A DNA stretch of 64,000 bases, taken from NCBI GenBank assembly GCA_965112155.1, contig OZ218099.1. One strand, 5' to 3'. Shown piece after piece: positions 1-45,375 of the stretch (positions within the stretch are counted from its first letter, which is position 1; each line of letters begins with the position of its first letter). Under the pieces are notes generated by a model. It was not told the origin of the DNA. It was given only the letters and a program-made list of their open reading frames with translations, and did not search any database. The position numbers and the translations under genes are program-made. The stretch comes from Podarcis liolepis (taxonomy: Eukaryota).

Positions 1-3000
1 CTTCAGTTGCTCTACTTTGAGTAGGACTAGTGTTAGATACAAGCCAACAAGGGCTCCCACTAGCATAACAGGGCTTCTTCCGCCTCTACTCCACCTGCAG
101 CGCCAAAATAAATGACTCTGGGGGATTAGGAGAATCCCCAGAACACAGTGAATGGTACCCATAGTTTAAGTCACCATTTGAAATTGAATACAGATTCTAA
201 TAAAATTTGCAGGTAATTTTTTGTTGAAACCAGCATGCATTACTCTGGTTAATTTAATATTCCTGTTTTGTGTTTCAAGTACAGTAAATTTTATTGTTCA
301 GAACCATCAACAACAGGAAAACCCTTTACCCATTGTTAGTAATTTTTAGAATTTATCAGTTATGCTCATGAAGTAAGTGGCTTTTGCAGTAGCTTCCAAA
401 AATGTCTGTCTTCTGGCCTAACAAAGCAAAAAAGCACACACAAAGAAACCCGCCTTGACAGGATAGCCTTTGCAAAATTATTGAATCTCTGGAGACAATT
501 CTAATATTAATAAATTTCAAGGGAATGAGAAATACTTTTATCACTTGGAAAGGCTAGAAGAACATTTATCCAGCACAATGTCTAGCAATAACGAGAGATT
601 TTTACAAGGTCGTTCATCTCTTCCTTCAGTAAATTGTTATATTCATAAATTACATTTTTAAACTTCTCTGTTGTCTTCCTGTTTTCCATTACATTTATCC
701 AAGGGTTTTCAAAGTTGCTGCTGTTTCTATGACCTGAGTACCAGTATATTCCTTTTCTGTCCTAAAATCCATTGGCATATACATAAGAAACAAAAACTTC
801 AAGATACTAGGTTTTTTAAATTTCAGAAATGAGTATAAGTTTTGTTTAGAAAGCTACATAAATTAGGTTGTTTCATTTCAACAGATAAATCATTTTGAAC
901 TACTAACTTCTTGGTATTAACGAGCAGAATACTGTAATCAGTTTACACTTGTTTAACGCTACATACAGTGCACTAGCTATTTCTTCTTTTGTCCACCATC
1001 TGTTAAAACTCCTGACAATTATACTTTGGTTTTAAGATGAGCAAATATTCTGCACATATCCTACTGCACATATCCTACAAATTTGTTTGAGGGTTGATCC
1101 ATCATTCTACTTCCTATGTGCCATAGTGAACCCAGGGAATGGGCAGCTGCATCACTGCAACAGAAGACCTTGCAGAGTACATAATGTGGGTGGTACTATT
1201 AATTAGTTTAGAAGACTGATTAAAATCAGTGGACATAACTAAAGTAAATAACTTAAATGAATACTACCCTGTTGATATTTGGGAATTCTAACTGTAAATC
1301 AAAATGAGAAATAATCTGTTCTTTCTTTGCATGAGATGCTTAGCTTCCATTTATAAATCTGAGTCTACCACCCCCATCCAGCTGTCCTCATCCATATCAG
1401 GGAATGTCTACAATGATATGGGCTTTCATAATTACATTTCCAGATGGTTTGGAAGTCATATATACAAAAGGTGTGACACATATGATGCCCAATATCTGGA
1501 CCTTGGAGCTGCTTGTATAGTTATTGATCCCAGACTGGGAGCCACTGAGCTGATGATTGATGCCAACAACTTTGTGACAAAGATGGTGGTGGTAGATTCA
1601 CTATCCCCATTCATTCCAAAGAGGTGACTGGTGCTATCAAAAGTGATACTGCTGACCACCTGTTGGACAATCAGGCATTGACAGATGTTGTTTTATGTAC
1701 ATAATATCTCTTGATTGGAGCCAAGGAGTATAGCACGGAGATGAATATGCAGCAATTAATCAACTACTTGTGCTCCATATGCTGATTTACCCCTTTCATT
1801 TGAGAAATGTTCAACCCTCCTTCCAACTGCAGATCTCGTATAAATAAAAATTCCATTGGGCCATTTCCTGTAGTCAAAATGAAAAGAAAATGCATTTGCG
1901 ATCTGCATTTGAGCATCAAACACTCTTCTAATTAAATTGTTCTTTTAGATCTTTTAGATATCCTATGGAGTGTGTTAAACCCTCTACAACAGATTAAATA
2001 AAAATGTTTTTTTAAGAATAAAATTAGCCTGATGGGAAAAAGAGACCCAATCAACTGGGGATTATTTCAAGTGCTACATGAGAAATGCACACTTATCATC
2101 TATGTAATTAGATTTTAATAAACACTTTTGATAGATACCTTTAAAGATATATTTTAATGGCAAAGTGGTGTCGGTGTCATGACTAACAGTGTGAAGAGAG
2201 GGGCTTTTTTAAAGTTGGATTTTTAATTACATTTTAATTATGATAAGCTTTTTCTAAACTAAGGTATTTTCCCAAATGATTATTAATGTTATAAATCAGT
2301 GTTCAGAAAGTGATGCATTACTACAATGCCTCAGCCAGTAAAATAAACATAGGAACTGCTTGTATTTTTTTGTTCTAAGCTAGATAAAAATAATATTAAA
2401 AATGTGCAAGCTTTGGCACACATGGGCTCCACTGAAAACAGCTTCTCCATGCGAACCAGGAAGTGACCTTTCCAGATAATGGAATGACTCTTCTTTTCGT
2501 ATCTCTGTGATCTCCTGGGTGACACCCTTAGGCAGCTGGATGTGCATGCATACTCCGTCTGTTTCCCTCTCTCCCACGTCCCCTCTGCACAGCACTGGGC
2601 ACTGGCAGCCCACGCTACACCACTGCTGGTTAGCAGCTTGTTTGCTGGAAGAAAACTATGAGAAAAATTGATTCCCCCTCATTCTAAAATAGCCTTTTAT
2701 GAATCAGTCACATTCATACCACTCATTTAAAGCTGCCTTAAGGCTGCCAACCTCACAGACTGACATATCCCAACACCCTTAACAAACTACAGTTCCCAGG
2801 ATTCTTTGATGGAAGCAATGGCTGTTAAAGTAGTATAAGAATACTTTAAATGTATGACACAGAGAAGTTCCATTGACACAGCTGCTTCTCATCAATATCA
2901 ATATTTGGTGAATGGTATTTGGACAGGGATGCTGATTGTTTATCTTTCTACTTAAGTGCACCCTATAGTCCACTTAAATATATGTCTAAAACGTAAATTT

Positions 3001-3019
3001 ACCATAGTAAATGAATATA

Positions 3020-3025
3020 TATCTA

Positions 3026-3072
<47 letters not shown>
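3020..3072. repeat. (CTAT)n microsatellite
   Basis: About 11 tandem CTAT/ATCT units read directly. Confidence 0.95.
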
Positions 3073-3073
<1 letters not shown>

Positions 3074-6000
3074 CCCTCCGGTAAATGATAGTATTTACAG
3101 TATGTTTTGCATTCATTGCATTCTTAGGGTCAGACTAGGTGTAAAATCTGTAAAGTTAGATCTATCTCAGTCTTTTTCTTTCATTAAAGCAACTACAGTG
3201 CCCTCAGATATGACCCATAGTTCTGGGGAAGGAGAGGTTACCTCCCAAAGTAACCTCTCTATTAGCAGTGGAGAAGGAAAAAAGATACCTCTATTGTACC
3301 TCCATTTCCATCTGCTGTGTATACTGTTGGCATGGGAGGAGTTTATGTCAGTAATGGTGCATGAGGAAAAAGTTAACCCCTGTGGCCAGTTTTCCAATAT
3401 GCAGTAGATTCTTTCAGCAACAGAAACAGTTTTAGATGATCAAATGATGTGTCTTCTATGTCATGCCTAATGTGGCCCTTATTGGCTGCCTAGGCTTTTA
3501 TCTGGTAGGATTAAAAACTCTGCTATATAAGAGTGTGCAAACAATACTGCACTGCCCATCAAGTAAGCAATTTTTCCCCCTGCGGTGTGGTATAATACTG
3601 CTTTGTGGAGAAACTGAATTAGTGGCCAACTTACTGTTCTGACTATGCACACATATTTCTTTTCAGCTAGGCAAGTTTGTATTAATAATGCTTCTTTGGG
3701 GAATAGTGACAAAGTGCCAGGATGTCTAGAGTAAATTTTCTATTGATCAGCAAGACCCAAATTCACTCCAATTCGATATTATTTATGTTGGTAATTACTA
3801 AATAGAGTAGGCAGAGCCTGGACTGGAACCAAGATTGACATTCAGGCTTAATACTATAATGAGGCTTTAATAAACCAGTAATAGGCAGCTTCACAAAATG
3901 AAATGAGCAGTGATCACAAACACATAAATCAGTTGTGCAGATCTTAAATACATAAATGGTATTGATTTTTAAAAAATACTTATTTTTTGGTCCAAATATA
4001 ATTATAGACCAAGATAGCATTGCTTGATATGGCAACAGACCTTCGCAAAAAATAAAAAATTAAAAATGCAAATATTGAAAAATGATACACTATGAACATT
4101 CTTGCATTTTTTTTAAAAAGAAGCTTGGAGGTACACAAGGAAGGCAGAAGGGGTTATTTATGATGTCAACTGTACTATGTCAGAACCCATCTGGTATCAT
4201 ACCACCAAGAGGTTGAGCTCCAGGGGTCATCAGTTTTATTTGTGGGGGAGACAGATGTGAGAAACCCTGTTAAAGATACATTCAGGTCCAGTTCCAGAGG
4301 CGCTAGTTGAAAGTCAAAGGGGGCAGAGTTACATAATGTAGTCTAATGCAGGTGCTCAGGTATCAGATTCCAAAAGGGGAAGGCGCAAAGGGCATTTTCT
4401 GTTGAAAAAAGTTGCTCCTCAGGGTGGAGATATGCAGGGCCAGGCCTTGAGATCCACTGATGGAGTTCTCAACTAAGTGACAGGAGTTGAAGTGTAGCAT
4501 AGTTGGCACTCTTGAGCTTAGTCTGGCTTTTGATTGGATTCTTGAGGTGCCTGGCTACGAGAAACCCTGGGCTGAGAACACCCCTAATGCCTTACAGCTT
4601 TCAGCAGTTAAACCTTGCCACAACAGCAGTGTCAATGAGAAAATGGGTAAGTAAAATCCATAGAATGGTATGCACTTCTGGAATGGGACTTTTCCTCCTC
4701 TCCTCCCCCTATATATGCTACACAGCCTTCCTAGGGGTTGGGGAAACATATTCCTAAAACCAGAGGTAGCCTAAATAATAGGTTACGCTCTGGACTAGGG
4801 TCACTGGAGAGAACCAGTCTAATTCCCCAGTATCCGCTGAATAAGTCTGCAGCACATTCTCTCTTCTCTGTCATATGCCTTATTCAATTTTCTTGAAGTA
4901 AGTATTGTTTGGGAGAAGTTTCAAAACATGAAAACCACTTAGTCAAAAGGTCTATTATTTTATTAGAATGCAGGTGGAGGAATAAAAGGGAAATAGTTTG
5001 TAAAACAAAAGATATTTTTTGACTCACCTACACATTTGAAATTCTAAGATCGCCCTAATCTCAGATACTCACAAAATAATTGTGAAGGGACAGTTTCCTG
5101 AAGTCGAAAGGAAGAGCTGAGAGCTGTCATAGGGCAGATAGGTGATGTTTTTGTGGTGCTCACAACAATGAAGAATGAACCATGTGTATCTTTCCGGGCA
5201 AAGCCTTGACACTTAGGGCTAGGCAGGAGCATCATAACGTTGAAAATGAGACTTTGGCAGCTGCCTAAAGATCAAAACAGGTGAGAGTTGAAGCTCAAAA
5301 TCTCTTCTTTTAAGACAGGCCACTAATATGATATTCAGTTAGCTGTGGACATATTGGATAATTGGTATGTGCTGAAGAAGTTAAGTGTGTGATGGTGCAG
5401 ATAGGATACTTGGAGGACAAAAACTGAATTCTAAAATTCTCCACAAGATCCATCTTAAAATCCACTCAAGTCCTCTCACGTGTTCAGTTTCCAAACTTTG
5501 CAGTTTTGGGTGGTCTTAGTTTCAGTAGTTGTCATAAACAAGGGTTCCAACCTGGACTGTGCATCAGATAGAGGTGTGATATTTTAATTTTAAACTATTT
5601 TAATTTATTTCTACATTTTATTGCTCGCATGAATATGTCTGCATATTAGAGCACTAATAGCATTTACTAGACCTATATTAATGTTTGCCCTAATCTAGCA
5701 AGGAAGATCCATGTTCAGTAGCAGCATCTTGCTCATGTAGCCGGTGCTGATGCATGTCTGAATGTGCACTGCATTTTTAAATTGATTTGTTTCTTTTAAA
5801 ACTTATATAAAACATTAAGCATCAGTACCTGAAGACTCTTCATTGGCAGGGTGTTCCACAGAGTGTTTTCCACTGCAGAAAAAAATCCCTAATCCTCAGG
5901 TCTGTCCTGCTGAGGCGCTGGAGCAGTACATCAGATGAAAACCAGAGCATTAAGGGGAAAATATATGAAAGAAGGTGGTCCTGCAATATAATGCTGCTCT

Positions 6001-9864: not shown

Positions 9865-9933
9865 ATCTGCAAGGACTTGGGCTTCCTGTGTGGCACCACC
9901 TGTGCTCTTCTAAAGAAGAAACAAATGTAAATA

Positions 9934-10158
9934 CAGTGGTACCTCGGGTTAAGTACTTAATTCATTCCGGAGGTCTGTTCTTAACCTGAGGCACCACTTT
10001 AGCTAATGGGGCCTCCTGCTGCTGCCGCGCCGCTGGAGCACGATTTCTGTTCTCATCCTGAAGCAAAGTTCTTAACCCGAGGTAATATTTCTGGGTTAGC
10101 GGAGTCTGTAACCTGAAGTGTATGTAACGTGAAGCGTTTGAAACCCGAGGTGCCACTG
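9934..10158 (+). mobile_element. Non-autonomous Tc1/mariner (pogo/Tigger-like) MITE, family A
   Basis: TIRs CAGTGGTACCTCGGGTT / AACCCGAGGTGCCACTG, TA on both sides; near-identical copy at 13528-13769. Confidence 0.9.
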
Positions 10159-13492: not shown

Positions 13493-13527
13493 TACATACT
13501 CACCCTCATACTCCACTATACATATTA

Positions 13528-13769
13528 CAGTGGTACCTCGGGTTAAGAACTTAATTCGTTCTGGAGGTCCGTTCTTAACCTGAAACTGTTCTTAACCTGA
13601 AGCACCACTTTAGCTAATGGGGCCTCCTGCTGCCGCTGCGCCGCGACTGCGTGATTTCTGTTCTCATCCTGAAGCAAAGTTCTTAACCCAAGGTACTATT
13701 TCTGGGTTAGCGGAGTCTGTAATCTGAAGCGTCTGTAACCTGAAGTGTCTGTAACCCAAGGTACCACTG
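13528..13769 (+). mobile_element. Non-autonomous Tc1/mariner MITE, family A (second copy)
   Basis: TIRs CAGTGGTACCTCGGGTT / AACCCAAGGTACCACTG; left TA, right CA (mutated); colinear with 9934-10158. Confidence 0.9.
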
Positions 13770-14847
13770 CATGTTGTTATGGTTACTGCACTGGAGATCC
13801 TATATTTGAAAAGGAAATCCCATTAATTTTCCTGCTTTTGTCTCTCACTCTCCTGTTAGTCTTACGAGAGCTCAGGAAGTTCGACTTTCATGTTTCCCTG
13901 TCACAATGTTTCAGTTGCAATACTTCATGTCAGCCTTCAGTATGTCACTGTGCGCCATTTCCTTACAACCTCTCAATAAAGTTATGGCATCTGTTCACCT
14001 GAACATTTACCCTCCCACTCACGCCTACTTCCACCTGCCTACTGAAAAAAATATAAAAAGAATAATTCACAGGAATCTTTTTTTCAAAATATAAAAATAA
14101 TGTACTCAGTGAATCTGGCTGTGACAAACACAAGCTTAATCAGTAGTTTTTGCAAATAATTACCCTTTTAATGGATTCAAGAAAAATAATAATACACAAA
14201 TGGGAAAATGTCCTCAAGAGGCAAAAGAATGATAACTTTAAGCCCTTTAAAAGTTGGAGACATGGTTTTTAAAAATTCACCATTTTAAAACAATAGGTGG
14301 AATTCCTTTGCAGGATTAATTTGCCATCCCATTTGTTTTACTAGTCCCTTAAGATCAGTTTATCTGCCAATGTTATGCTTCATTCTTAAATGCTGATAGC
14401 CTTCCTGAAATAGTGTTTCTGGGAATGGAGTTTCAAGATAGCCTTTTTGATTCTCCATGCTGAGTGAGATAAATGTAAAATTTTTACAATTGTCAATTAC
14501 ATCCTAGGTTAGTTGACTTGGCTTTCTTCACTCGTATATGTGGCTTAGACGTGGTACGGGGAATAGAAATGGTGCAACCATGATTTTTACAACTGTAAAA
14601 ACTGTATTTTCCTTAAATGAATATATTTTACTATTCAAAAATATAAATACATTTCAGTAAAAATATAAAGGACATGGGAAATTTAATTTCCTTTTATACT
14701 TTTTTTTTTTGAGATTTTAAAAGGCTGGGCAAATAAATAAAAACTACTTAACTTGGCCCCAACAAGAATGCTATGTTAGTGCCAGTCTTACTTCCTTTTG
14801 GAGGGTATTCCAAAGCCAGGATTCCCCTGCTAAGAAAGTCCCCTCCA

Positions 14848-15190
14848 AACCACTGAGCCTCGCGCTTGTCAATTGGAAGGTCGGCGGTTTGAATCCCCGC
14901 GACAGGGTGAGCTCCTATTGTTCGGTCCCAGCTCCTGCCATCCTAACCAGTTCGAAAGCACGTCAAAGTACAAGTAGATAAATAGGTACTGCTCTGGCGG
15001 GAAGGTAAACGGCGTTTCCGTGCACTGCTCTGGTTCACCAGAAGCGGCTTAGTCATGCTGGCCACATGACCCAGAAGCTGTCTGCGGACAAACACTGGCT
15101 CCCTCGGCCAGTAAAGTGAGATGAGCGCCGCAACCCCAGAGTCGTTGGCGACTAGACCTAATGGTCAGGGGTCCCTTTACCTCTACCTTA
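14848..15190 (+). mobile_element. Sauria SINE, lacking about 20 nt of the 5' head
   Basis: Diagnostic core AAGTAGATAAATAGGTAC, GGGAAGGTAAACGGCG, GTCATGCTGGCCACATGACC and (TTTACC)-type tail; aligns with 32838-33194. Confidence 0.93.
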
Positions 15191-30757: not shown

Positions 30758-31560
30758 AATAGAAATGTAGTAGAGGACAGTTTAAGAAAACCAGCTTATT
30801 CCCTGCAGCAATGCAATGGCCTTCAAAAAGCAATTAAGCTGCCTTCAGTAAACTGATATTCCTCCTCCAAGATCAATACTCAGCTGCACTTCTTACAAAG
30901 CTGATATGAAAATTTAAGTAATCTCCACAATTTAGGAGCTGACAAGGTAAAGGATAGTTAACTAGAATTAACCCTGATAGCACAGACATGTGACAGACCA
31001 ACATTTCATAACTCCATTGTAAAAGTGCAAATTGCTGTTATTCCTCCTTTGCAGTAATTTCCTCCTTTGCTGTTATTTCCTCCTTGGGGGTAAAAAAAAA
31101 GTTGCTGTGGTGTTTTTTTAACTGATCTGAATAAGTAACAAATCATTTGCAGAGAAACCAGTGACATAGTCTATGCTTCATATTTAACGTGTACATACCA
31201 CCTTTTCAAGTGAGCAAGTATCAGTGCACTACATAAATAGGAGAGCTAAAGATGTAATTGCTGCAATTTAAACTGAAGTTTGCTTCTGAGTGGAAGTTAA
31301 TTTTTGTGCCTATTTTTAGTGAATAGTTTTTATTGTAAATAAGAGTTGGTAATCAGGCAAGTGATTTGTTGACACCGTTTTCATTTGTTATTGTATCATA
31401 CAAGAAGTTTCTTTAATGTAGGACTATTTGATGGTACTCAGTCAATTATGGCTATGCATAAGAAGGGAGAATAAAAAGTAAATCTCTTAATTTCTGTGTC
31501 TAAAATAACCAGTTTGATTATTTTAGATTCAATTATATCTTGCTCATTTTTTATGAGTAA

Positions 31561-31650
31561 GGCTGCAGTCCTAACAGTAGTTAACTAGAAATAAGACCCA
31601 TTGAATCTAATAGTACTTACTTCTGAGTAGACATGGCTAGGGTTCCATGG
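31561..31650. repeat. Short palindromic MITE-like repeat (related copies near 43980-44045 and 48707-48763)
   Basis: Shared motif ..ACTTCTGAGTAGACATG..TAGG(A/G)TT and GGCTGCA.TCCT / AGGATTGCAGCC ends. Confidence 0.5.
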
Positions 31651-32124
31651 TAGGAAATTAATATTCAAATTCAACCACTGTTTTCTATATGAATTATGTT
31701 AAGATTTTATCTATTTACATTTTCCATTAACAGTTTAAAAATCATGCATTCTCTTGAATTCACTTTTTTTTAAAAATGAAATGAAGCTGAAAGAGCAAAT
31801 GTGCTTCCTGCCCCAGTTCAATCAGATAGAAACTCAGGAAGATACTGAATTATTTTAACCTTTAAGAAGAAGGAGCAGGGGGAGATTTATTGACAGGGTT
31901 CCAGAAATCCCTCTGCATGTATGTATGATACTTTTCTGCACACATGGTCTCTGTGTCCTTATGGCATGATCCCCCAGAGAGCTCTTGATCTTTAAGAAAG
32001 TGAAGCATGTGGAAGCACATGGCAAAGCACATGGTGGGGGTGGCTTAGTTATTTCCCTCTCTTTGGACAATAGGACCTTGACGTCATTTGTGAGTGATGA
32101 ACCTTCATGCCTTTTCTTTCTGTG

Positions 32125-32126
<2 letters not shown>

Positions 32127-32164
<38 letters not shown>
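32127..32164. repeat. (AC)n microsatellite
   Basis: About 18 AC units. Confidence 0.95.
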
Positions 32165-32167
<3 letters not shown>

Positions 32168-32289
32168 ATATCTATATATATCTATATCTATATGTACCTT
32201 TTTGGCCTTGCTGCCCCTGACCATAAAACCCACAAAATTACTATTGCTGTGCAGTATTCTGGAAAACGGGACACGAGTGGCGCTGTGGT

Positions 32290-32839
32290 GCAAGGCATTG
32301 TGTCCTTTAAACACTATATGAATGGAAGCAGGTATTCATGATCAGGACCCATTTTACATTTCAGATTTCAAGCCCAGCCTAACGCTGCCGCTAGTTCCAA
32401 GAAAGCCTTAAATTTGTTACAAACATGGCAATGCAATGTGTATTCTTTGGATACTTAATGTCCAAATGAAAGACGACATATACATCCACACCACAGACCA
32501 CTTGATGATTAAGAAAGCATACTGAAACCTGCTGTCTTTACTGACCTGAGAAACCTAGGAGGATGAAGGAAGTTTCTCAAAATTTCTATCTCACTCACCA
32601 GAAAACCAGGTCCTGAATTCAAGTGTCTGTATCTAGGTTTAGTGTCAGAGTTTGGATTCTGTTGATGCACTGTACTGTCCAACCACATCCCAGTCTGAGT
32701 TGGTCTCTGACCTAGTATTACAGACACACAGGATTATTGTCTTTGGGGCTTCAGTATTTGAGGCTACCCCATTTGAAGTAGCTCAGATCTTCACGGTGTT
32801 GTCCAACACATCAATAACCCTATAGCTTATACTATCTGG
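32290..32839 (-). repeat. Inverted duplicate of 44813-45375, embedded in a SINE composite
   Basis: Hand alignment gives about 21 substitutions and 3 indels over about 550 bp; ORF-track entries 32509..32727(-) and 44937..45155(+) are near-identical. Confidence 0.97.
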
Positions 32840-33194
32840 GACGCGGGTGGTGCTGTGGGTTAAACCACAGAGCCTAGGACTTACCAATCACAAGGTCAGC
32901 GGTTCAAATCCCCACAATGGGGTGAGCTCCCGTTGGTTGGTTCCTGCTCCTGCCAACCTAGCAGTTCAAAAGCAAGTCAAAGTGCAAGTAGATAAATAGG
33001 TAGCATTCCAGTGGGAAGGTAAACGGCGTTTCCGTGCACTGCTCTGGTTTGCCAGAAGCGGCTTAGTCATGCTGGCTACATGACCCGGAAGCTGTATGCT
33101 CGCTCCCTCGGCCAATAAAGCGAGATGAGCGCTGCAACCCCAGAGTCGGTCACGACTGGACCTAATGGTCAGGGGTCCCTTTACCTTTTACTTT
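32838..33194 (+). mobile_element. Full-length Sauria SINE
   Basis: GGGACGCGGGTGGTGCTGTGGGTTAAACC head, conserved core, CCCTTTACCTTTTAC tail; followed by TATTCTGGAAAAC, which also occurs at 32255-32267. Confidence 0.95.
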
Positions 33195-36100
33195 TATTCT
33201 GGAAAACAGAAAGATAAAGCACTGGCTCTGTGGGCTGGCATTAGTGAGACTATTGAAATAAAAGTTAAAATTTTATTCAAGTGACACAACTTTGGTACTG
33301 CATAAAACATAATCTGCAGGTATTGTATGATAATATGCATTACTTCAAATGACATGTTTCTTTTTGGAAATGGCTACAGATTGTGATTAGCTGTTATTTT
33401 AGTTATAGAAGAAGAAACAAATAAATAAAATACTAAAAATACAAAATTGCATTGCGGTTTTGTTGCCATCAGCAGGAAGTTGAAATCAGTTTGATAGTAA
33501 ACGTGGTTGTAGTTAACCAAACTACCTGCAGCTCGGTTAGCCAGTGAACTGGATTTTGTTGTATATTTTGTATTACAATTTGAATTGAAAATTGAATTGA
33601 ATTGAATATGTGCCAGGTGCAATTTTTTGCTGTGTAATATTTTAATTAAAGTAGAGTTCTGTGTTTGTGTACAGTTTAAACAGTATGGGTGAAAATAAGA
33701 AAATAAAAGAGAAATGTCTTGTGTTAATCATAAATAAAGGACAGTTGGCTGTTGCTTCACTTTTGTGGAAGCCTTGTGTTTGAAACATGTAACTTCAATA
33801 TGATTGTTATATGTATAAAATGCTTACTAAATTTGTGAAATGTGTCTTAGTGGTTGTATATACTTGTGGTAGTTTGACATACATAGTTATGATAAAGTGT
33901 TGTGCATATAGACTTGTCTTTCTTTTTAAATAATTTTTTTCCCCAGCAAAATATGAACAAAGCATTAAGCTTCCCCCAATTTCACTCGCTGGAACAGAAG
34001 TTTAATGTACTGTATCAGATTTTGTCATAAGCCTTCATTAGTGCCAGTCATCAGAGTGCTTGTTCAAATATTTTATAAAGGGGTACCATATTTTGATCAA
34101 ATTGTCCACATCAGATATATTGTTCAAGGCATGCATCCTTTTTGTCAGTTGTTCAGATAAGGCAATTGTCCATACATTCTGTCTCCATTGAAAGACGTGT
34201 AGATGTTCAGGTCCTTTCCAGTTCTGTGCTGTGAGTAGACATAGACTTGTCATGTGGAGAACCTCTGGCTCTTGGGACTAATGAGGTCTCCCAGGCTTCC
34301 CATTTGGCCTGCCAGACCATTTTGGCCAAGCCACATCCATATGCCACTCACCTGGCAGTATAACATGGTGTCTTGAAGTCTCAACACTCAGCGGATTATC
34401 AATGCTTAAAATACCATATTACCTGATGCCATTGTGCTGAGTGATTGACAGGTGGACAGCCCCACTCACCTGCCAAATTTTGACTGTAGCAGATGGGGAG
34501 TTAAGGACCTGGTCCACTGGCTGGATCCAGTTCCCCACTCTTGCCTTATAATGATCAAACAGCTTTACTCTGTGCTCTATAGCAGATAAGAAAGACAATG
34601 TCTGTGGTTCACAACTGGCCAAACAAGTTCTTTTCTCCAGCACTCACATCTCTTTAATATTTAGATTCAATAATTTTAGGTCATTTAGTAGGATAGGCAT
34701 AGTGTGTGCTTTTGTGTATCTTCCAGGGTGAATGTTTATCTAACTGAAATGTGCAATGTTTTTGCCATTTCCCTTAATAAAGTTCCTAATCAGTGGTATT
34801 GTATTCTTACTTGGACTTTATCCATTCATGTTATAAATGTAATAACAAATTTTCTAATCCTCTTTGAAGCCTCATATTATCTTATTTGAAGTGTTTTCTA
34901 TAAGTCTGCAACGTTATAGGGAACAAGATCATTCTATAGCCTTTAGCCATATTCCCTTTTACTATGAACTTGTGAGCCTATTAAGGTTTCTTCTGGTCAT
35001 TTGTTAGGTTTTGTTCTATTGTCTATTATAAAAGTGCTGCAGGAAGTGAGGCTGTTCTGATGAGCCTTTAGTTCTGGGGTCAGGCAATTCATGCAACAGA
35101 CTTTTAAGGAGCATTACATTCCTTTGTAAGTGTTTGGGGTTTTTTAAAATGTGGAATAAAGTAAATAAAGCTCAAAACTCCTGAAGATGTTATGGCAAGT
35201 TTTGTGAAAAAGAAAGGAAGAAAAGGGAGGGGTTAACCTTAGGGTAAATTCAAACTGGTAAAAACCAACCAATTGAAAACTCAATCTCTGCTTTCAGTTA
35301 AGCAGTTTTTAGGTCAGAAGAGACTGCTATATTATCAAGTGGTCTGCCCTTCTGAATATCAAAGTTATTTTCTATCAATAATACCTGCTTCAGTCTCAAA
35401 ATGTCCACAAGGATATTCACCTTTTTATAGATTTAACTTGATGAAACATACAATTAGATCCTTTTTTAAAAAATTACCTATGCCTTCACTGGCAACTTTT
35501 CTTAAACTGGGAAAACACAGTGGTCTGTTGGGAGATGAGGACTGAACACAGACTATTTATCATCCTATGCACACTTATATTTGAGTAAGACCTGAACATA
35601 AGCCTCAGAAGGAGCAGCGGCATGTAGCAGACCCATTAGACTTAGTCCAAACAGAGGAGAGGCAATAGCAAGGAATATGTGCCGTTCTTCTGAGAAGCGG
35701 CCATTGGTGCCTGGACTTCGTGAGAGAAAGTGAAAGAGCTGTGCTAGAGGAGGGAGATAGAATTGTAAAGGCATGTTTGAGTGAGGAGTGGAAACATCAG
35801 GTCCTAGCTCCCAGTGATTGATAGCTAGCTGTATTGGGAGACATTAAAAAGGAGCTAGCCATGGGCAAAGGATTAACCATTCAGAGGTTGGCAACCCTGA
35901 AGGAGTGACTCCAAAGGGAATATTCACAAGTAGCCATGTGTTCAGTATAGTGGGCCCAATTTTGTGGAACTCCCTTCCAGCTGGGGTCAGACACTCCCCC
36001 CCCCCTTTGTTGAACTCCCACAGCTTACTGAATACTTAGAAAAAATTATTCCAGGAGGCTTTTCGATTGACCTCTGAGTTAATAGTTTTAATTTATTTGT

Positions 36101-43075: not shown

Positions 43076-43900
43076 TAAGAACATAAGAGTTGTGTTGGAT
43101 CAGACCAAATGCATAGCATCCTGTTCTCAAAGTAGCCAACCTAATTTCTGTGGGAAGTCACAAGCATGACTCAACAGTGTTGAGTGTTCCCCAATTCCCA
43201 AGCAACTCGTGTTTAGAGGCATATCATATCTGATACTGGCTGTATATATACTCATCATGATTAGTCACCATTAAGATCAGTTGTGTAATCCCCTTTTTAA
43301 GCTCTCCAAGTTACAGCAGTGCCTCGCAAGACGAAATTAATCCGTTCCGCGAGTTTCTTCGTCTTGCGGTTTTTTCGTCTTGCGAAGCACGGCTATTAGC
43401 GGCTTAGAGGCTATTAGCAGCTTAGCGGCTATTAACGGCTTAGCGGCTATTAACGGCTTAGCGGCTTTAAGAAAAAGGAAACAAACTTGCAAGAACTCGC
43501 AAGACGTTTCGTCTTGCAAAACAAGCCCATAGGGAAATTCGTCTTGCGGAACGACTCAAAAAATGGAAAACTCTTTCGTCTTGCGCGTTTTTCGTCTTGC
43601 GAGGCATTCGTCTTGCGAGGTACCACTGTAGTGAGCATCACTACATTGTGTGGCAGTGAATTCCACTGAATAAGTACTTTGTCTGTCTTGAATCTTCCAA
43701 TATTCAACTTCCCTATATGACCCTAGGTTCCTATATTATGGGACAGGAAGAAAAACATAATACTGTCCACATCATGTCACCCATTACTTGGCCTTTCCCC
43801 CACTTAACTAAAAAACCCCAGATCTTGTAACCTTTCCTCATAGTAATTGTTACTGCCCGGGATGATAATTTGGGTTACCTGGTTTTGCACCCTTCTTAGC
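43076..43900 (-). mobile_element. CR1 LINE 3' fragment interrupted by a MITE
   Basis: TAAGAACATAAGAG..TGGATCAGACCA..AGCATCCTGTTCTC end; CR1-like sequence resumes after the MITE (CATCACTACAT..GGCAGTGAATTCCAC). Confidence 0.7.
43314..43628 (-). mobile_element. Young Tc1/mariner (pogo/Tigger-like) MITE, family B
   Basis: TIRs CAGCAGTGCCTCGCAAGACGAA / TTCGTCTTGCGAGGTACCACTG, TA flanks, 9 copies of CGTCTTGC (both strands), 4 x 18-bp internal tandem repeat. Confidence 0.93.
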
Positions 43901-44418
43901 TCTAAAATATCATGTTCAGATTGCTTAGGAATCATGGCTTCTTGGCTTCTTTGTTTAGGCTGAAGTCTTTGCTGACTTATGTAGGAGTGAGGCCTACTGA
44001 ACTCAGTGGTACTGACTTCTGAGTAGACATGTTTAGGATTGTGCTGTTGGGGTATATGTATACCTCCTTTAATAAAATCTTATTCCAGGACAATTTACAT
44101 TACAATTTGAAATGCAATATGATAACTACCGTAATCACACATATAAGAATAAGAATAATATTCAAAATGCTAAAACCATAAAATGGCTAGCAGTCAAGTA
44201 TTTAAAATTAATTTAAAAAAAATAAAAAAGGTTTTAAGCACAAAACTTGGGAGTGATCATGTCAACTGCCCAATCATCTCCATACAGGAAGACTAATTCT
44301 CTTACAGGCTGTAACTCATTTTAAATGAGAACTCCTTGATGGCTTCAAGGAATTCTTCAGATTCCATCAGCCTCTAGGGGGCAGCATAATAGTTCTTATC
44401 CACTTGCAGAATGAAATA

Positions 44419-44705
44419 CAGTGGTACCTCGCAAGACGAATGCCTCGCAAGACGAAAAACACGCAAGACGAAAGAGTTTTCCGTTTTTTGAGTCGTTCCG
44501 CAAGACGAATTTCCCTATGGGCTTGCTTCGCAAGACGAAATGTCTTGCGAGTTTGATTCCTTTTTCTTAAAGCCGCTAAGCCGTTAATAGCCGCTAAGCC
44601 GTTAATAGCCGCTAAGCCACTAATAGCCGTGCTTCGCAAGACGAAAAAACCGCAAGACGAAGAGACTCGCGGAACGGATTAATTTCGTCTTGCGAGGCAC
44701 CACTG
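44419..44705 (+). mobile_element. Young Tc1/mariner MITE, family B (inverted second copy)
   Basis: TIRs CAGTGGTACCTCGCAAGACGAA / TTCGTCTTGCGAGGCACCACTG, TA flanks; reverse complement of 43314-43628 with 3 rather than 4 18-bp units. Confidence 0.93.
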
Positions 44706-44812
44706 TAGTTGATGCAAGTCTGAACCTCATCAGTAAACGTTTTGACCTTATAAAAGGGGCTAGACAAACCCTTCCATAATTTGTACATTATCCTCGTATC
44801 CTGCAGAAAACA

Positions 44813-45375
44813 CCAGATCAGAGTATAAGCTACTATAAATATAGGGTTGTTGATGCGTTGGACAACCCCGTGAAGATCTGAGCTACTTCAAATGGGGTAG
44901 CCTCAAATACTGAAGCCCCAAAGACAATAATCCTGGGTGTCTGCAATACTAGGTCAGAGACCAACTCAGACTGGGATGTGGTTGGACAGTACAGTGCATG
45001 AACAGAATCCAAACTCTGACACTAAAGCTAGATACAGACACTTGAAATCAGGACCTGGTTTTCTGGTGAGAGAGAGAGAAATTTTGGGGAACTTCCTTCA
45101 TCCTCCTAGGTTTCTCAGGTCAGTAAAAACAGCAGGTTTCAGTATGCTTTCTTAATCACCAAGTGGTCTGTGGTGTGGATGTATATGTCGTCTTTCATTT
45201 GGACATTAAGTCTCCAAAGAATACACATTGCATTGCCATGTTTGTAACATATTTCAAGGCCTTCTTGGAACTAGCGGCAGGGTTAGGCTGGGCTTCAAAT
45301 CTGAAATGTAAAATGGGTCCTGATCATGAATACCAGCTTCCATTCATATAGTGTTTAAAGGACATAATGCCTTGC
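44813..45375 (+). repeat. Presumed donor copy of the segment duplicated at 32290-32839
   Basis: About 96% identical to the reverse complement of 32290-32839; no SINE sequence or TSD at its own ends. Confidence 0.95.

What the first reader, a model, noticed from the sequence alone, without database searches (positions are those of the whole stretch)
32255..33207. Chimeric SINE insertion that captured ~550 bp of local DNA from 12 kb away, inside one target-site duplication
Seen in sequence: a perfect 13-bp direct repeat TATTCTGGAAAAC (32255-32267 and 33195-33207) encloses three parts. These are a 22-bp Sauria SINE head GGGACACGAGTGGCGCTGTGGT (32268-32289), an inverted ~96% identical copy of 44813-45375 (32290-32839), and a full Sauria SINE (32838-33194) joined through a GG microhomology. 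The 44.8-kb copy has no SINE or TSD, so it looks like the donor. Established: Sauria SINEs are mobilised by target-primed reverse transcription using RTE/BovB machinery, and LINE RTs can switch templates. Inference, model 1: RT copied the SINE, jumped to a nearby minus-strand template (nascent RNA or DNA), then jumped back to a SINE 5' end. Inference, model 2: a later templated insertion landed in the SINE head and duplicated 21 bp of it. Either way it is a route for SINE-associated local duplication that puts captured sequence behind a Pol III A-box fragment.
Basis: partly seen in the sequence, partly recalled or inferred. Interest (0 to 1): 0.8.

Follow-up and report, generated by a model that had tools for sequence, protein, structure and literature searches.

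The report
SINE insertion carrying copied neighbouring DNA
A lizard jumping element (a Sauria SINE) sits inside one insertion scar together with a 550-base inverted copy of ordinary DNA from 12.5 kb away and a second copy of its own first 22 bases; this is real and shared between related lizards, and it most likely records copy-and-paste machinery straying onto a nearby template, a process already seen with human LINE-1.

Summary
A perfect 13-bp direct repeat, found nowhere else in the window, encloses three parts:
- a 22-bp SINE head;
- a 550-bp inverted copy of 44813-45375 (21 substitutions, 96.2% identity, 3 indels);
- an exactly full-length Sauria SINE.

It is not an assembly artefact. Contigs from an independent sample of the same species label and from a second species bridge the junctions, and a third species shows the SINE tail against the right repeat and flank.

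I favour one event at about 0.57: Bov-B-type target-primed reverse transcription copied the whole SINE RNA. The cDNA tip then primed through a GG microhomology on a template tethered nearby. A second copy of the SINE's first 22 bases ended up at the 5' side. The main rival, at about 0.3, is a later DNA-level templated insertion into the SINE head. It needs its return point to coincide with SINE base 1.

[quoted passage not shown] So this is a new member of a known kind. The Pol III A-box idea is not supported.

The parts
32255..32267 (+). Left copy of the 13-bp target-site duplication TATTCTGGAAAAC. It starts with TA and has TT at -11/-10.
   Evidence: The Tn-TA signature of Sauria SINEs is described in PMC13295347.
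32268..32289 (+). Second copy of SINE bases 1-21, plus one T. It differs from the neighbouring SINE head at positions 6, 9 and 14; two of these three lie in CpG context.
32290..32839 (+). Captured segment X, an inverted copy of 44813-45375. Its last two bases (GG, 32838-32839) are shared with SINE bases 1-2. The 9-bp and 3-bp deletions relative to the donor lie within 30 bp of this junction.
   Evidence: Low copy number: (1-4 contigs per position).
32838..33194 (+). Full-length Sauria-type SINE. It has a tRNA-like head, a B box GTTCAAATC at 32902, a Bov-B-like 3' region (AGAGTCGGTCACGACT) and a decayed terminal (ACCTTT)n.
   Evidence: (family ends at 32838 and 33188/33190; 91-128 contigs per position)
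33195..33207 (+). Right copy of the 13-bp target-site duplication.
44813..45375 (-). Donor locus of X: 563 bp, with no SINE, no direct repeat at its ends and no TE boundary at its ends.
32352..32355 (+). TTTT run in X, about 85 bases after the head start. It would terminate any Pol III transcript started from the head fragment.

Best explanation
The composite was most likely made in one event, during integration of a Sauria SINE by Bov-B (RTE-clade) target-primed reverse transcription.

Shown:
- One TA-initiated 13-bp target-site duplication encloses everything.
- The SINE is exactly full length.
- X abuts SINE base 1 through a GG overlap.
- The donor lies 12.5 kb away in cis and is inverted.
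- The composite is old and shared between species.

Inferred sequence of steps:
1. The endonuclease nicked the bottom strand before TATTCTGG.
2. The whole SINE RNA was reverse transcribed.
3. The free cDNA 3' tip (...CC) annealed to GG on a template tethered nearby that had minus-strand sense at 44.8 kb. This template was either single-stranded DNA or nascent or chromatin-bound RNA.
4. The tip was extended by about 550 bases, slipping twice in the first 30 bases. That slipping would account for the 3-bp and 9-bp deletions.
5. The upstream (reciprocal) end meanwhile carried a 21-22-base copy of the SINE 5' end. This came either from an aborted start of second-strand synthesis on the cDNA tip, or from a second jump onto SINE RNA.
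6. The two ends were joined almost bluntly, with one extra T.

The product has no evident function. It is a fossil of a non-canonical integration that duplicated local DNA.
For: - The X/SINE junction is exactly at the family's 5' end. Between 341 and 419 contigs per run end their match at 32838, and a 2-bp GG is shared with the donor. A polymerase that ran off the end of the RNA explains this directly.
- The outer repeat starts with TA, and the SINE ends in decayed ACCTTT units. This is the signature reported for Sauria SINEs (PMC13295347). The inner 21-bp repeat starts with GGG, and X has no retroposon tail. A separate TPRT of X is therefore unlikely.
- The two larger indels lie within 30 bp of the X/SINE junction. 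Chance is about 0.003 for both, or 0.009 for at least two of the three indels. This fits unstable synthesis just after a template switch.
- The ages agree. The SINE differs from the majority letter of its >=90%-similar relatives at 9 listed sites out of 357; 6 of them are not CpG, about 1.8%. X against its donor gives K2P 3.9%, or 1.96% per lineage.
- A donor only 12.5 kb away in a genome of gigabase scale points to a template tethered in cis.
- Precedents exist. [quoted passage not shown] Tripartite chimeras made by double template jumps have been found inside one TSD (PMC2104539).
- In each of the four runs, 15-26 contigs join a SINE 3' end directly to a SINE 5' end (joint 33188 to 32838). 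This is compatible with frequent continuation past the SINE 5' end in this genome.
Against: - No empty-site or SINE-only allele was seen or excluded, so the order of events is inferred rather than observed.
- The age comparison rests on a truncated list: up to 18 further variable places in X1 were not shown. The numbers are also small.
- The origin of the 22-base head needs an extra step, either aborted second-strand synthesis or an internal jump with no microhomology.
- Contigs from other samples carry donor-like letters inside X. These may be assembly mosaics or gene conversion, which would blur the dating.
- Minus-strand transcription at the donor was not tested, and the gene context is unknown.
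Confidence: 0.57

Rival explanations
1. Two steps. An ordinary full-length SINE insertion came first. Later, a DNA-level templated insertion landed in its head, either by replication template switching of the MMBIR/FoSTeS kind or by patch repair of a staggered break. It copied 550 bp from the inverted locus 12.5 kb away. It then returned 21 bp upstream of its point of departure, which duplicated SINE bases 1-21.
For: - A local, inverted, cis donor, a 2-bp microhomology at one junction and a near-blunt junction with one extra base at the other are all typical of such events.
- A small duplication flanking a templated insert is the expected footprint.
- The three differences between the two head copies fit decay since a duplication.
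- No observation here fixes the order of events.
Against: - The return point would have to fall on SINE bases 1-3 by coincidence. That is roughly 1% if it could land anywhere in the SINE, and a few percent if it is restricted to within tens of bp.
- The SINE does not look older than the duplication: 1.8% non-CpG against 1.96% per lineage. A SINE twice as old would give about 13 non-CpG differences against the 6 seen.
- The L1 data show that the same outcome arises during integration itself.
Confidence: 0.3
2. X is an independent retrocopy or transposable element. It inserted into the SINE head by its own TPRT or transposition, and the 21-bp head repeat is its own target-site duplication.
For: - A direct repeat of about 21 bp flanks X.
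- Earlier first-reader notes on this genome mention long target-site duplications and retrocopies nested in SINEs. These notes are unverified.
Against: - X has no poly(A), no microsatellite or Bov-B-like tail and no terminal inverted repeats.
- The 21-bp repeat starts with GGG, or with CCA on the other strand, not with the TA signature.
- Only 1-4 contigs at >=90% identity lie on X in each of four runs, against 91-128 on the SINE.
- The only other copy in 64 kb is the donor.
- The nearness of the donor would be unexplained.
Confidence: 0.05
3. Assembly artefact or collapsed chimera of reads.
For: The SINE part is highly repetitive. Short-read graph contigs break inside it, so no single contig spans the whole composite.
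Against: - Contigs from an independent sample of organism A, from another study, bridge TSD-head-X with more than 31 bases on each side. So do contigs from organism B.
- X4 also bridges X/SINE.
- All four runs hold the SINE tail followed by the right repeat and flank.
Confidence: 0.02

Closest known systems
[quoted passage not shown] 2024 preprint, PMC11702581)
   Same: A retroelement copy and a piece templated from nearby chromosomal DNA lie together at one integration site. The extra piece sits on the 5' (reciprocal-end) side. The authors attribute it to processing or extension of DNA ends before the final ligation.
   Different: - Those are L1 ORF2p events in cultured human cells. This one is an RTE-clade (Bov-B) partner SINE, fixed in the germline of lizards.
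- Here the element's own first 21-22 bases are duplicated around the captured piece.
- I could not read the L1 supplementary figures, so sizes and distances were not compared.
Bipartite and tripartite chimeric retrocopies made by LINE RT template switching (U6-L1 and others; Gogvadze et al. 2007, PMC2104539; L1 chimera census, bioRxiv 10.1101/2025.02.02.635956)
   Same: Several parts lie head to tail inside one target-site duplication. The 3'-most part is the element that the RT recognises. Double jumps have been documented.
   Different: - Known partners are abundant RNAs (snRNAs, Alu, mRNAs, a fungal non-coding RNA) drawn from anywhere in the genome.
- Here the middle part is unique, unspliced sequence from 12.5 kb away.
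- The 5' part is a 22-base piece of the same SINE, not a full small RNA.
Microhomology-mediated replicative template switching (FoSTeS/MMBIR) and templated sequence insertions at double-strand breaks (TSIP class 2, PMC5110952)
   Same: A templated insert without a tail, microhomology or one or two extra bases at the junctions, and a donor in cis that may be inverted.
   Different: Those events are independent of transposon ends. Here one junction is exactly at SINE base 1, and the whole structure lies inside a TPRT-type duplication. TSIP donors are described as distant regions and as derived from RNA.
Twin priming and 5' transduction of LINEs/SINEs
   Same: Both give unusual 5' portions inside one target-site duplication.
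   Different: - Twin priming inverts the element's own 5' part. Here the head is direct, and the inverted piece is foreign only relative to its donor.
- 5' transduction needs a source copy lying downstream of X. The donor has no SINE beside it.

Membership tests
Sauria SINE (Bov-B/RTE-mobilised squamate SINE) | tRNA-related head with Pol III A and B boxes | tested here: inconclusive
   The B box GTTCAAATC is at 32902. An A-box-like TGGTGCTGTGG is present but fails a strict consensus pattern. ARAGORN and Rfam call nothing.
Sauria SINE (Bov-B/RTE-mobilised squamate SINE) | 3' region shared with Bov-B LINE and a terminal (ACCTTT)n | tested here: met
   The SINE has AGAGTCGGTCACGACT, against AGAGTCGGACACGACT at the 3' end of Podarcis muralis Bov-B copies printed in the supplement of PMC13295347. 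I compared these by eye and they match at 15 of 16 bases. The copy ends in ACCTTT TACTTT. The ACCTTT repeat is reported.
Sauria SINE (Bov-B/RTE-mobilised squamate SINE) | Target-site duplication beginning with T (TA), about 10 nt downstream of a T run (Tn-TA) | tested here: met
   The repeat starts with TA. TT lies at -11/-10 and T at -13, so the T run is only partial. The signature is described.
Sauria SINE (Bov-B/RTE-mobilised squamate SINE) | High copy number in lizard genomes | tested here: met
Summed depths are 10^5-10^7, against 10-50 for the flanks, in four runs.
LINE-RT template-switch chimeric retrocopy | All parts enclosed by a single target-site duplication, with the RT-recognised element at the 3' end | tested here: met
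LINE-RT template-switch chimeric retrocopy | The parts are copies of RNAs (transcribed, often processed) | not testable with these tools
   X is colinear with genomic DNA and shows no splicing or tail. DNA and unspliced RNA templates are equally allowed.
TPRT-coupled local templated insertion (as in L1, PMC11702581) | [quoted passage not shown] | tested here: met
   The donor is 12.5 kb away on the same contig. X lies on the 5' side of the SINE, inside the duplication.
MMBIR/FoSTeS templated insertion unrelated to retrotransposition | Breakpoints independent of transposon termini; microhomology at junctions | tested here: inconclusive
   There is a GG microhomology at one junction and a blunt join with one extra T at the other. 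One breakpoint coincides exactly with SINE base 1, which this family does not predict.

The most novel reading that the evidence does not exclude
RTE-clade (Bov-B) integration intermediates in squamate germlines may regularly prime DNA synthesis on nearby chromosomal DNA or nascent RNA. SINE or LINE insertion would then be a recurrent source of small local, often inverted, segmental duplications. Such duplications would be recognisable genome-wide as head-X-full-element composites inside one Tn-TA target-site duplication.
Probability: 0.2. Interest if true: 0.6.

Novelty: new member of a known kind. Interest (0 to 1): 0.38.

Why it matters
If the one-event reading is right, this locus is a naturally fixed germline example, in a reptile and for an RTE-clade LINE/SINE pair, of something shown so far mainly for human L1 in cultured cells: an integration intermediate that copies neighbouring chromosomal sequence before it is sealed. 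It gives a concrete search pattern for measuring how often retrotransposition seeds local duplications. That pattern is a short element head, then unique local DNA, then a full element, all within one target-site duplication. The locus also preserves junction details that bear on how 5' ends are attached: GG priming, slippage next to the switch, and a near-blunt join. As a single locus with no evident function, it is of modest importance on its own.

Tried and rejected
- tRNA and Rfam scans of the window found nothing.
- Pfam on nine of the ten ORFs of 110 aa or more gave no real hit. The gene context, and hence transcription of the donor's minus strand, stays unknown.
- Earlier notes of this scan had nothing near the locus and nothing by sequence. 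A blank there carries no weight. Notes elsewhere in the genome mention snRNA chimeras and long target-site duplications, which are leads only.
- I looked for a Podarcis Sauria SINE consensus in the supplement of PMC13295347 to date the SINE properly. None is held as text. I used the majority letters as a weaker substitute.
- I considered short similarities between the donor flanks and the target site (CTGCAGAAAAC against TCTGGAAAAC), and an imperfect 9-10-bp inverted repeat around the donor. I rejected both as probably chance after many looks.
- I considered a SINE dimer with a later replacement. It needs the same coincidence as the two-step rival, so it gains nothing.
- I considered reading donor-like letters in other species' contigs as proof of gene conversion. 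I rejected this because graph contigs of two 96%-identical copies can be mosaics.
- The share of about 0.6 of sampled words in other runs first suggested an empty site. One search showed that the junctions are present, so the missing words are mostly the SINE and diverged words.
Full report
**1. What is in the sequence**

- TATTCTGGAAAAC occurs at 32255-32267 and 33195-33207 and nowhere else in the 64-kb window, even with one mismatch allowed. Dinucleotide-preserving shuffles give a mean of 0.18 matches, and none of 100 gave two.
- Immediately inside the left repeat lies GGGACACGAGTGGCGCTGTGG followed by T (32268-32289). This matches the first 21 bases of the SINE at 32838-32858 with three mismatches. 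The pattern has only these two matches in the window, and shuffles give 0.00.
- From 32290 to 32839 the sequence aligns to the reverse complement of 44813-45375. There are 21 substitutions in 550 aligned bases (96.2%), and the donor has 1, 9 and 3 extra bases at three places. blastn, counting gaps, gives 95.3% over 549 bp.
- The homology ends abruptly on both sides. At the right end the last two aligned bases, GG (32838-32839), are also the first two bases of the SINE. At the left end there is no shared base, and one T belongs to neither the SINE head nor the donor.
- The donor has no SINE beside it, no direct repeat at its ends and no repeat boundary there.
- A self-comparison of the whole window finds only four repeated pairs. 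This is the only young pair that is not an interspersed repeat.

**2. The SINE**

The element at 32838-33194 has the following features.
- A B box, GTTCAAATC, at 32902.
- A 3' region, AGAGTCGGTCACGACT, that matches the 3' end of Podarcis muralis Bov-B copies printed in a paper's supplement. I compared these by eye and they agree at 15 of 16 bases.
- A terminal ACCTTT TACTTT.

Nakatsuka and Ohshima (PMC13295347) report that Sauria SINEs end in (ACCTTT)n. They also report that their target-site duplications start with T of a TA, about ten bases downstream of a short T run. Here the duplication starts with TA, and TT lies at -11/-10. This fits, although the T run is only partial.

Public contigs define the family's ends. 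In each of four runs, 341-419 contigs stop matching at 32838, and 378-499 stop at 33188, with further ones at 33190. The copy is therefore exactly full length, and the X/SINE junction falls on SINE base 1.

**3. Is it real, how old is it, and how many copies of X exist?**

The stretch 31800-33700 is held by runs of five coded organisms. The share of sampled words is 0.92 in the probable source sample and 0.56-0.60 in the others. I laid the Logan contigs of four runs on 31300-34200 at 90% likeness.
- The left junctions (flank, repeat, head, X) are bridged by three contigs. One is from X1 (32204-32360, no differences). One is from X4, an independent sample of the same organism label from another study. 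One is from X3, organism B (32219-32362, one difference).
- The X/SINE junction is bridged by an X4 contig (32618-32913). An X1 contig reaches 26 bases into the SINE.
- All four runs, including organism D, have a contig that holds the last 27-28 SINE bases, the right repeat and the flank.
- The unique right flank differs from the window by about 0.4% (D), 0.9% (B) and 1.3% (X4).

The composite is therefore not an assembly artefact. It predates the split of these lineages.

At positions inside X, only 1-4 contigs are laid per run. In X1, exactly two contigs cover 32545-32694. One has no differences. The other has the seven donor-specific letters. X is therefore not a high-copy family at 90% identity or above. 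A complete genome search was not possible with these tools.

The K2P distance between X and its donor is 3.9%, or 1.96% per lineage. The rate implied by Table 2 of PMC13295347 (21.4% for 134 My, as quoted) puts the duplication at roughly 12 My. This is a rough figure.

**4. How it arose**

Because one duplication encloses everything, the ancestral site was a single TATTCTGGAAAAC and all 927 bases between the repeats were added. Three routes are possible: one composite integration, a SINE followed by a later DNA-level templated insertion, or a SINE followed by a separate transposition of X.

*The third route is weak.*
- X has no tail and no terminal repeats.
- The 21-bp inner repeat does not start with TA.
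- X is low copy.
- The nearness of the donor would be a coincidence of the order of 10^-5 in a genome of gigabase scale.

*The first two routes both explain the local inverted donor and the junction features. Four observations tilt towards one event.*

(a) The inner junction is exactly at SINE base 1.
- This follows directly if synthesis ran to the end of the SINE RNA and then continued elsewhere.
- In the two-step model it is a coincidence of about 1% to a few percent.

(b) The 9-bp and 3-bp indels both lie within 30 bp of that junction.
- The chance of both falling there is about 0.003, or 0.009 for at least two of the three indels.
- This is what slippage just after priming on a new template would produce.

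(c) The SINE does not look older than the duplication.
- Against the majority letter of its relatives at 90% or more, it differs at nine listed positions out of 357.
- Six of these are outside CpG, about 1.8%, compared with 1.96% per lineage for X.
- A SINE twice as old would be expected to show about 13 non-CpG differences.
- The listing was truncated, so this argument is supportive only.

(d) There is direct experimental precedent.
- The authors attributed this to processing of DNA ends before ligation (PMC11702581).
- Tripartite chimeras made by double template jumps inside one duplication are also known (PMC2104539).
- Large sets of L1 chimeras with other RNAs have been catalogued.

In addition, in each run 15-26 contigs join a SINE 3' end directly to a SINE 5' end (joint 33188 to 32838). 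This shows that SINE 5' ends are often followed directly by another template in this genome. It could also reflect insertion into SINE tails.

**5. Favoured sequence of steps (inference)**

1. The bottom strand was nicked before TATTCTGG.
2. The SINE RNA was copied in full.
3. The cDNA 3' tip (...CC) paired with GG on a template of minus-strand sense at 44.8 kb. It was extended by about 550 bases, slipping twice at the start.
4. The reciprocal end carried a copy of SINE bases 1-21. There are two possible sources for this. Second-strand synthesis may have begun on the cDNA tip and come off, or the extended cDNA may have made a last jump onto SINE RNA.
5. The ends were sealed with a near-blunt join and one extra T. 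This is the kind of 5' join described for full-length L1 insertions.

The three differences between the two heads (positions 6, 9 and 14; two of them in CpG context) are what later decay of a CpG-rich 21-mer would give. They do not discriminate between models. Whether the X template was DNA or RNA cannot be decided here. X is colinear with the genome, and I could not test expression.

**6. What is not supported**

The suggestion that the event usefully places captured DNA behind a Pol III A box has no support. X has no match to the B-box pattern, and a TTTT run at 32352-32355 would stop Pol III about 85 bases after the head start. No function is apparent.

**7. Caveats**

- Contigs from X4, X3 and X8 carry donor-type letters at many of the sites where X and the donor differ in the window. 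One of these is the X4 contig that runs into the SINE.
- With two 96%-identical copies, graph contigs can be mosaics. Alternatively, the inverted copies may exchange sequence by gene conversion. I do not rely on these letters, but they make the dating soft.
- The substitution spectrum between X and the donor is 9 transitions to 12 transversions, unusual but based on small numbers.

**8. Comparison and verdict**

The locus works like a non-canonical TPRT product with template switching or end extension on a local template. It meets the structural criteria of that class and of the Sauria SINE family. The RNA-partner criterion of classical chimeric retrocopies could not be tested. It is a new member of a known kind: the first such case I can point to for a Bov-B/Sauria SINE pair, germline-fixed and shared between species. 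I found no paper describing one among those searched.

My confidence figures are:

| Reading | Confidence |
|---|---|
| One event | about 0.57 |
| Later DNA-level templated insertion | about 0.30 |
| Separate mobile X | about 0.05 |
| Assembly artefact | about 0.02 |

Interest is moderate. It is a clean and informative fossil, but a single locus, and its mechanism is not resolved between close alternatives.

Noticed in passing
window 31591-31687: This is a high-copy repeat containing ...CCCATTGAATCTAATAGTACTTACTTCTGAGTAGACATGG. Its summed contig depth is 1300-4000, against 10-50 for unique flanks. Several contigs in all four runs join about 21 bases of it directly to a SINE 5' start (31635 to 32838). 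One contig joins a SINE 3' end to it through 22 intervening bases. The element may be a common neighbour or partner of Sauria SINEs.
   Followed up: no
window 32838-33190 (family level): In each of four runs, 15-26 distinct contigs join a SINE 3' end (33188) straight to a SINE 5' end (32838). Head-to-tail SINE dimers are therefore common in these genomes. They could come from end-to-end template jumping or from insertion into SINE tails.
   Followed up: no
window 32290-32839 versus 44813-45375: Contigs of other samples and species carry donor-type letters at many X/donor difference sites. One of these contigs continues into the SINE. Either the contigs are mosaics or there is gene conversion between the inverted copies. 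The spectrum of 9 transitions to 12 transversions is also odd.
   Followed up: partly
window 14847-15182: A second Sauria-type SINE, 5'-truncated (it starts near AAACCAC of the head) and 82.7% identical to the one studied.
   Followed up: partly
window 44417-44707 and 43312-43630: An inverted pair of an interspersed repeat, 88% identical, rich in CGCAAGACGAA-like units. It lies 120 bp from the donor's end. A similar motif appears in flanks of P. muralis Bov-B copies in a paper's supplement.
   Followed up: no
window 13526-13769 and 9932-10158: Another direct repeat pair, 83.6% identical over 244 bp. It is unclassified.
   Followed up: no
window 32128-32203: A (CA)n run followed by an ATCT/ATAT-type microsatellite lies just upstream of the insertion site. 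The read tool skipped 32115-32203 as a repeat, and X4 has small deletions at 32238-32244.
   Followed up: no
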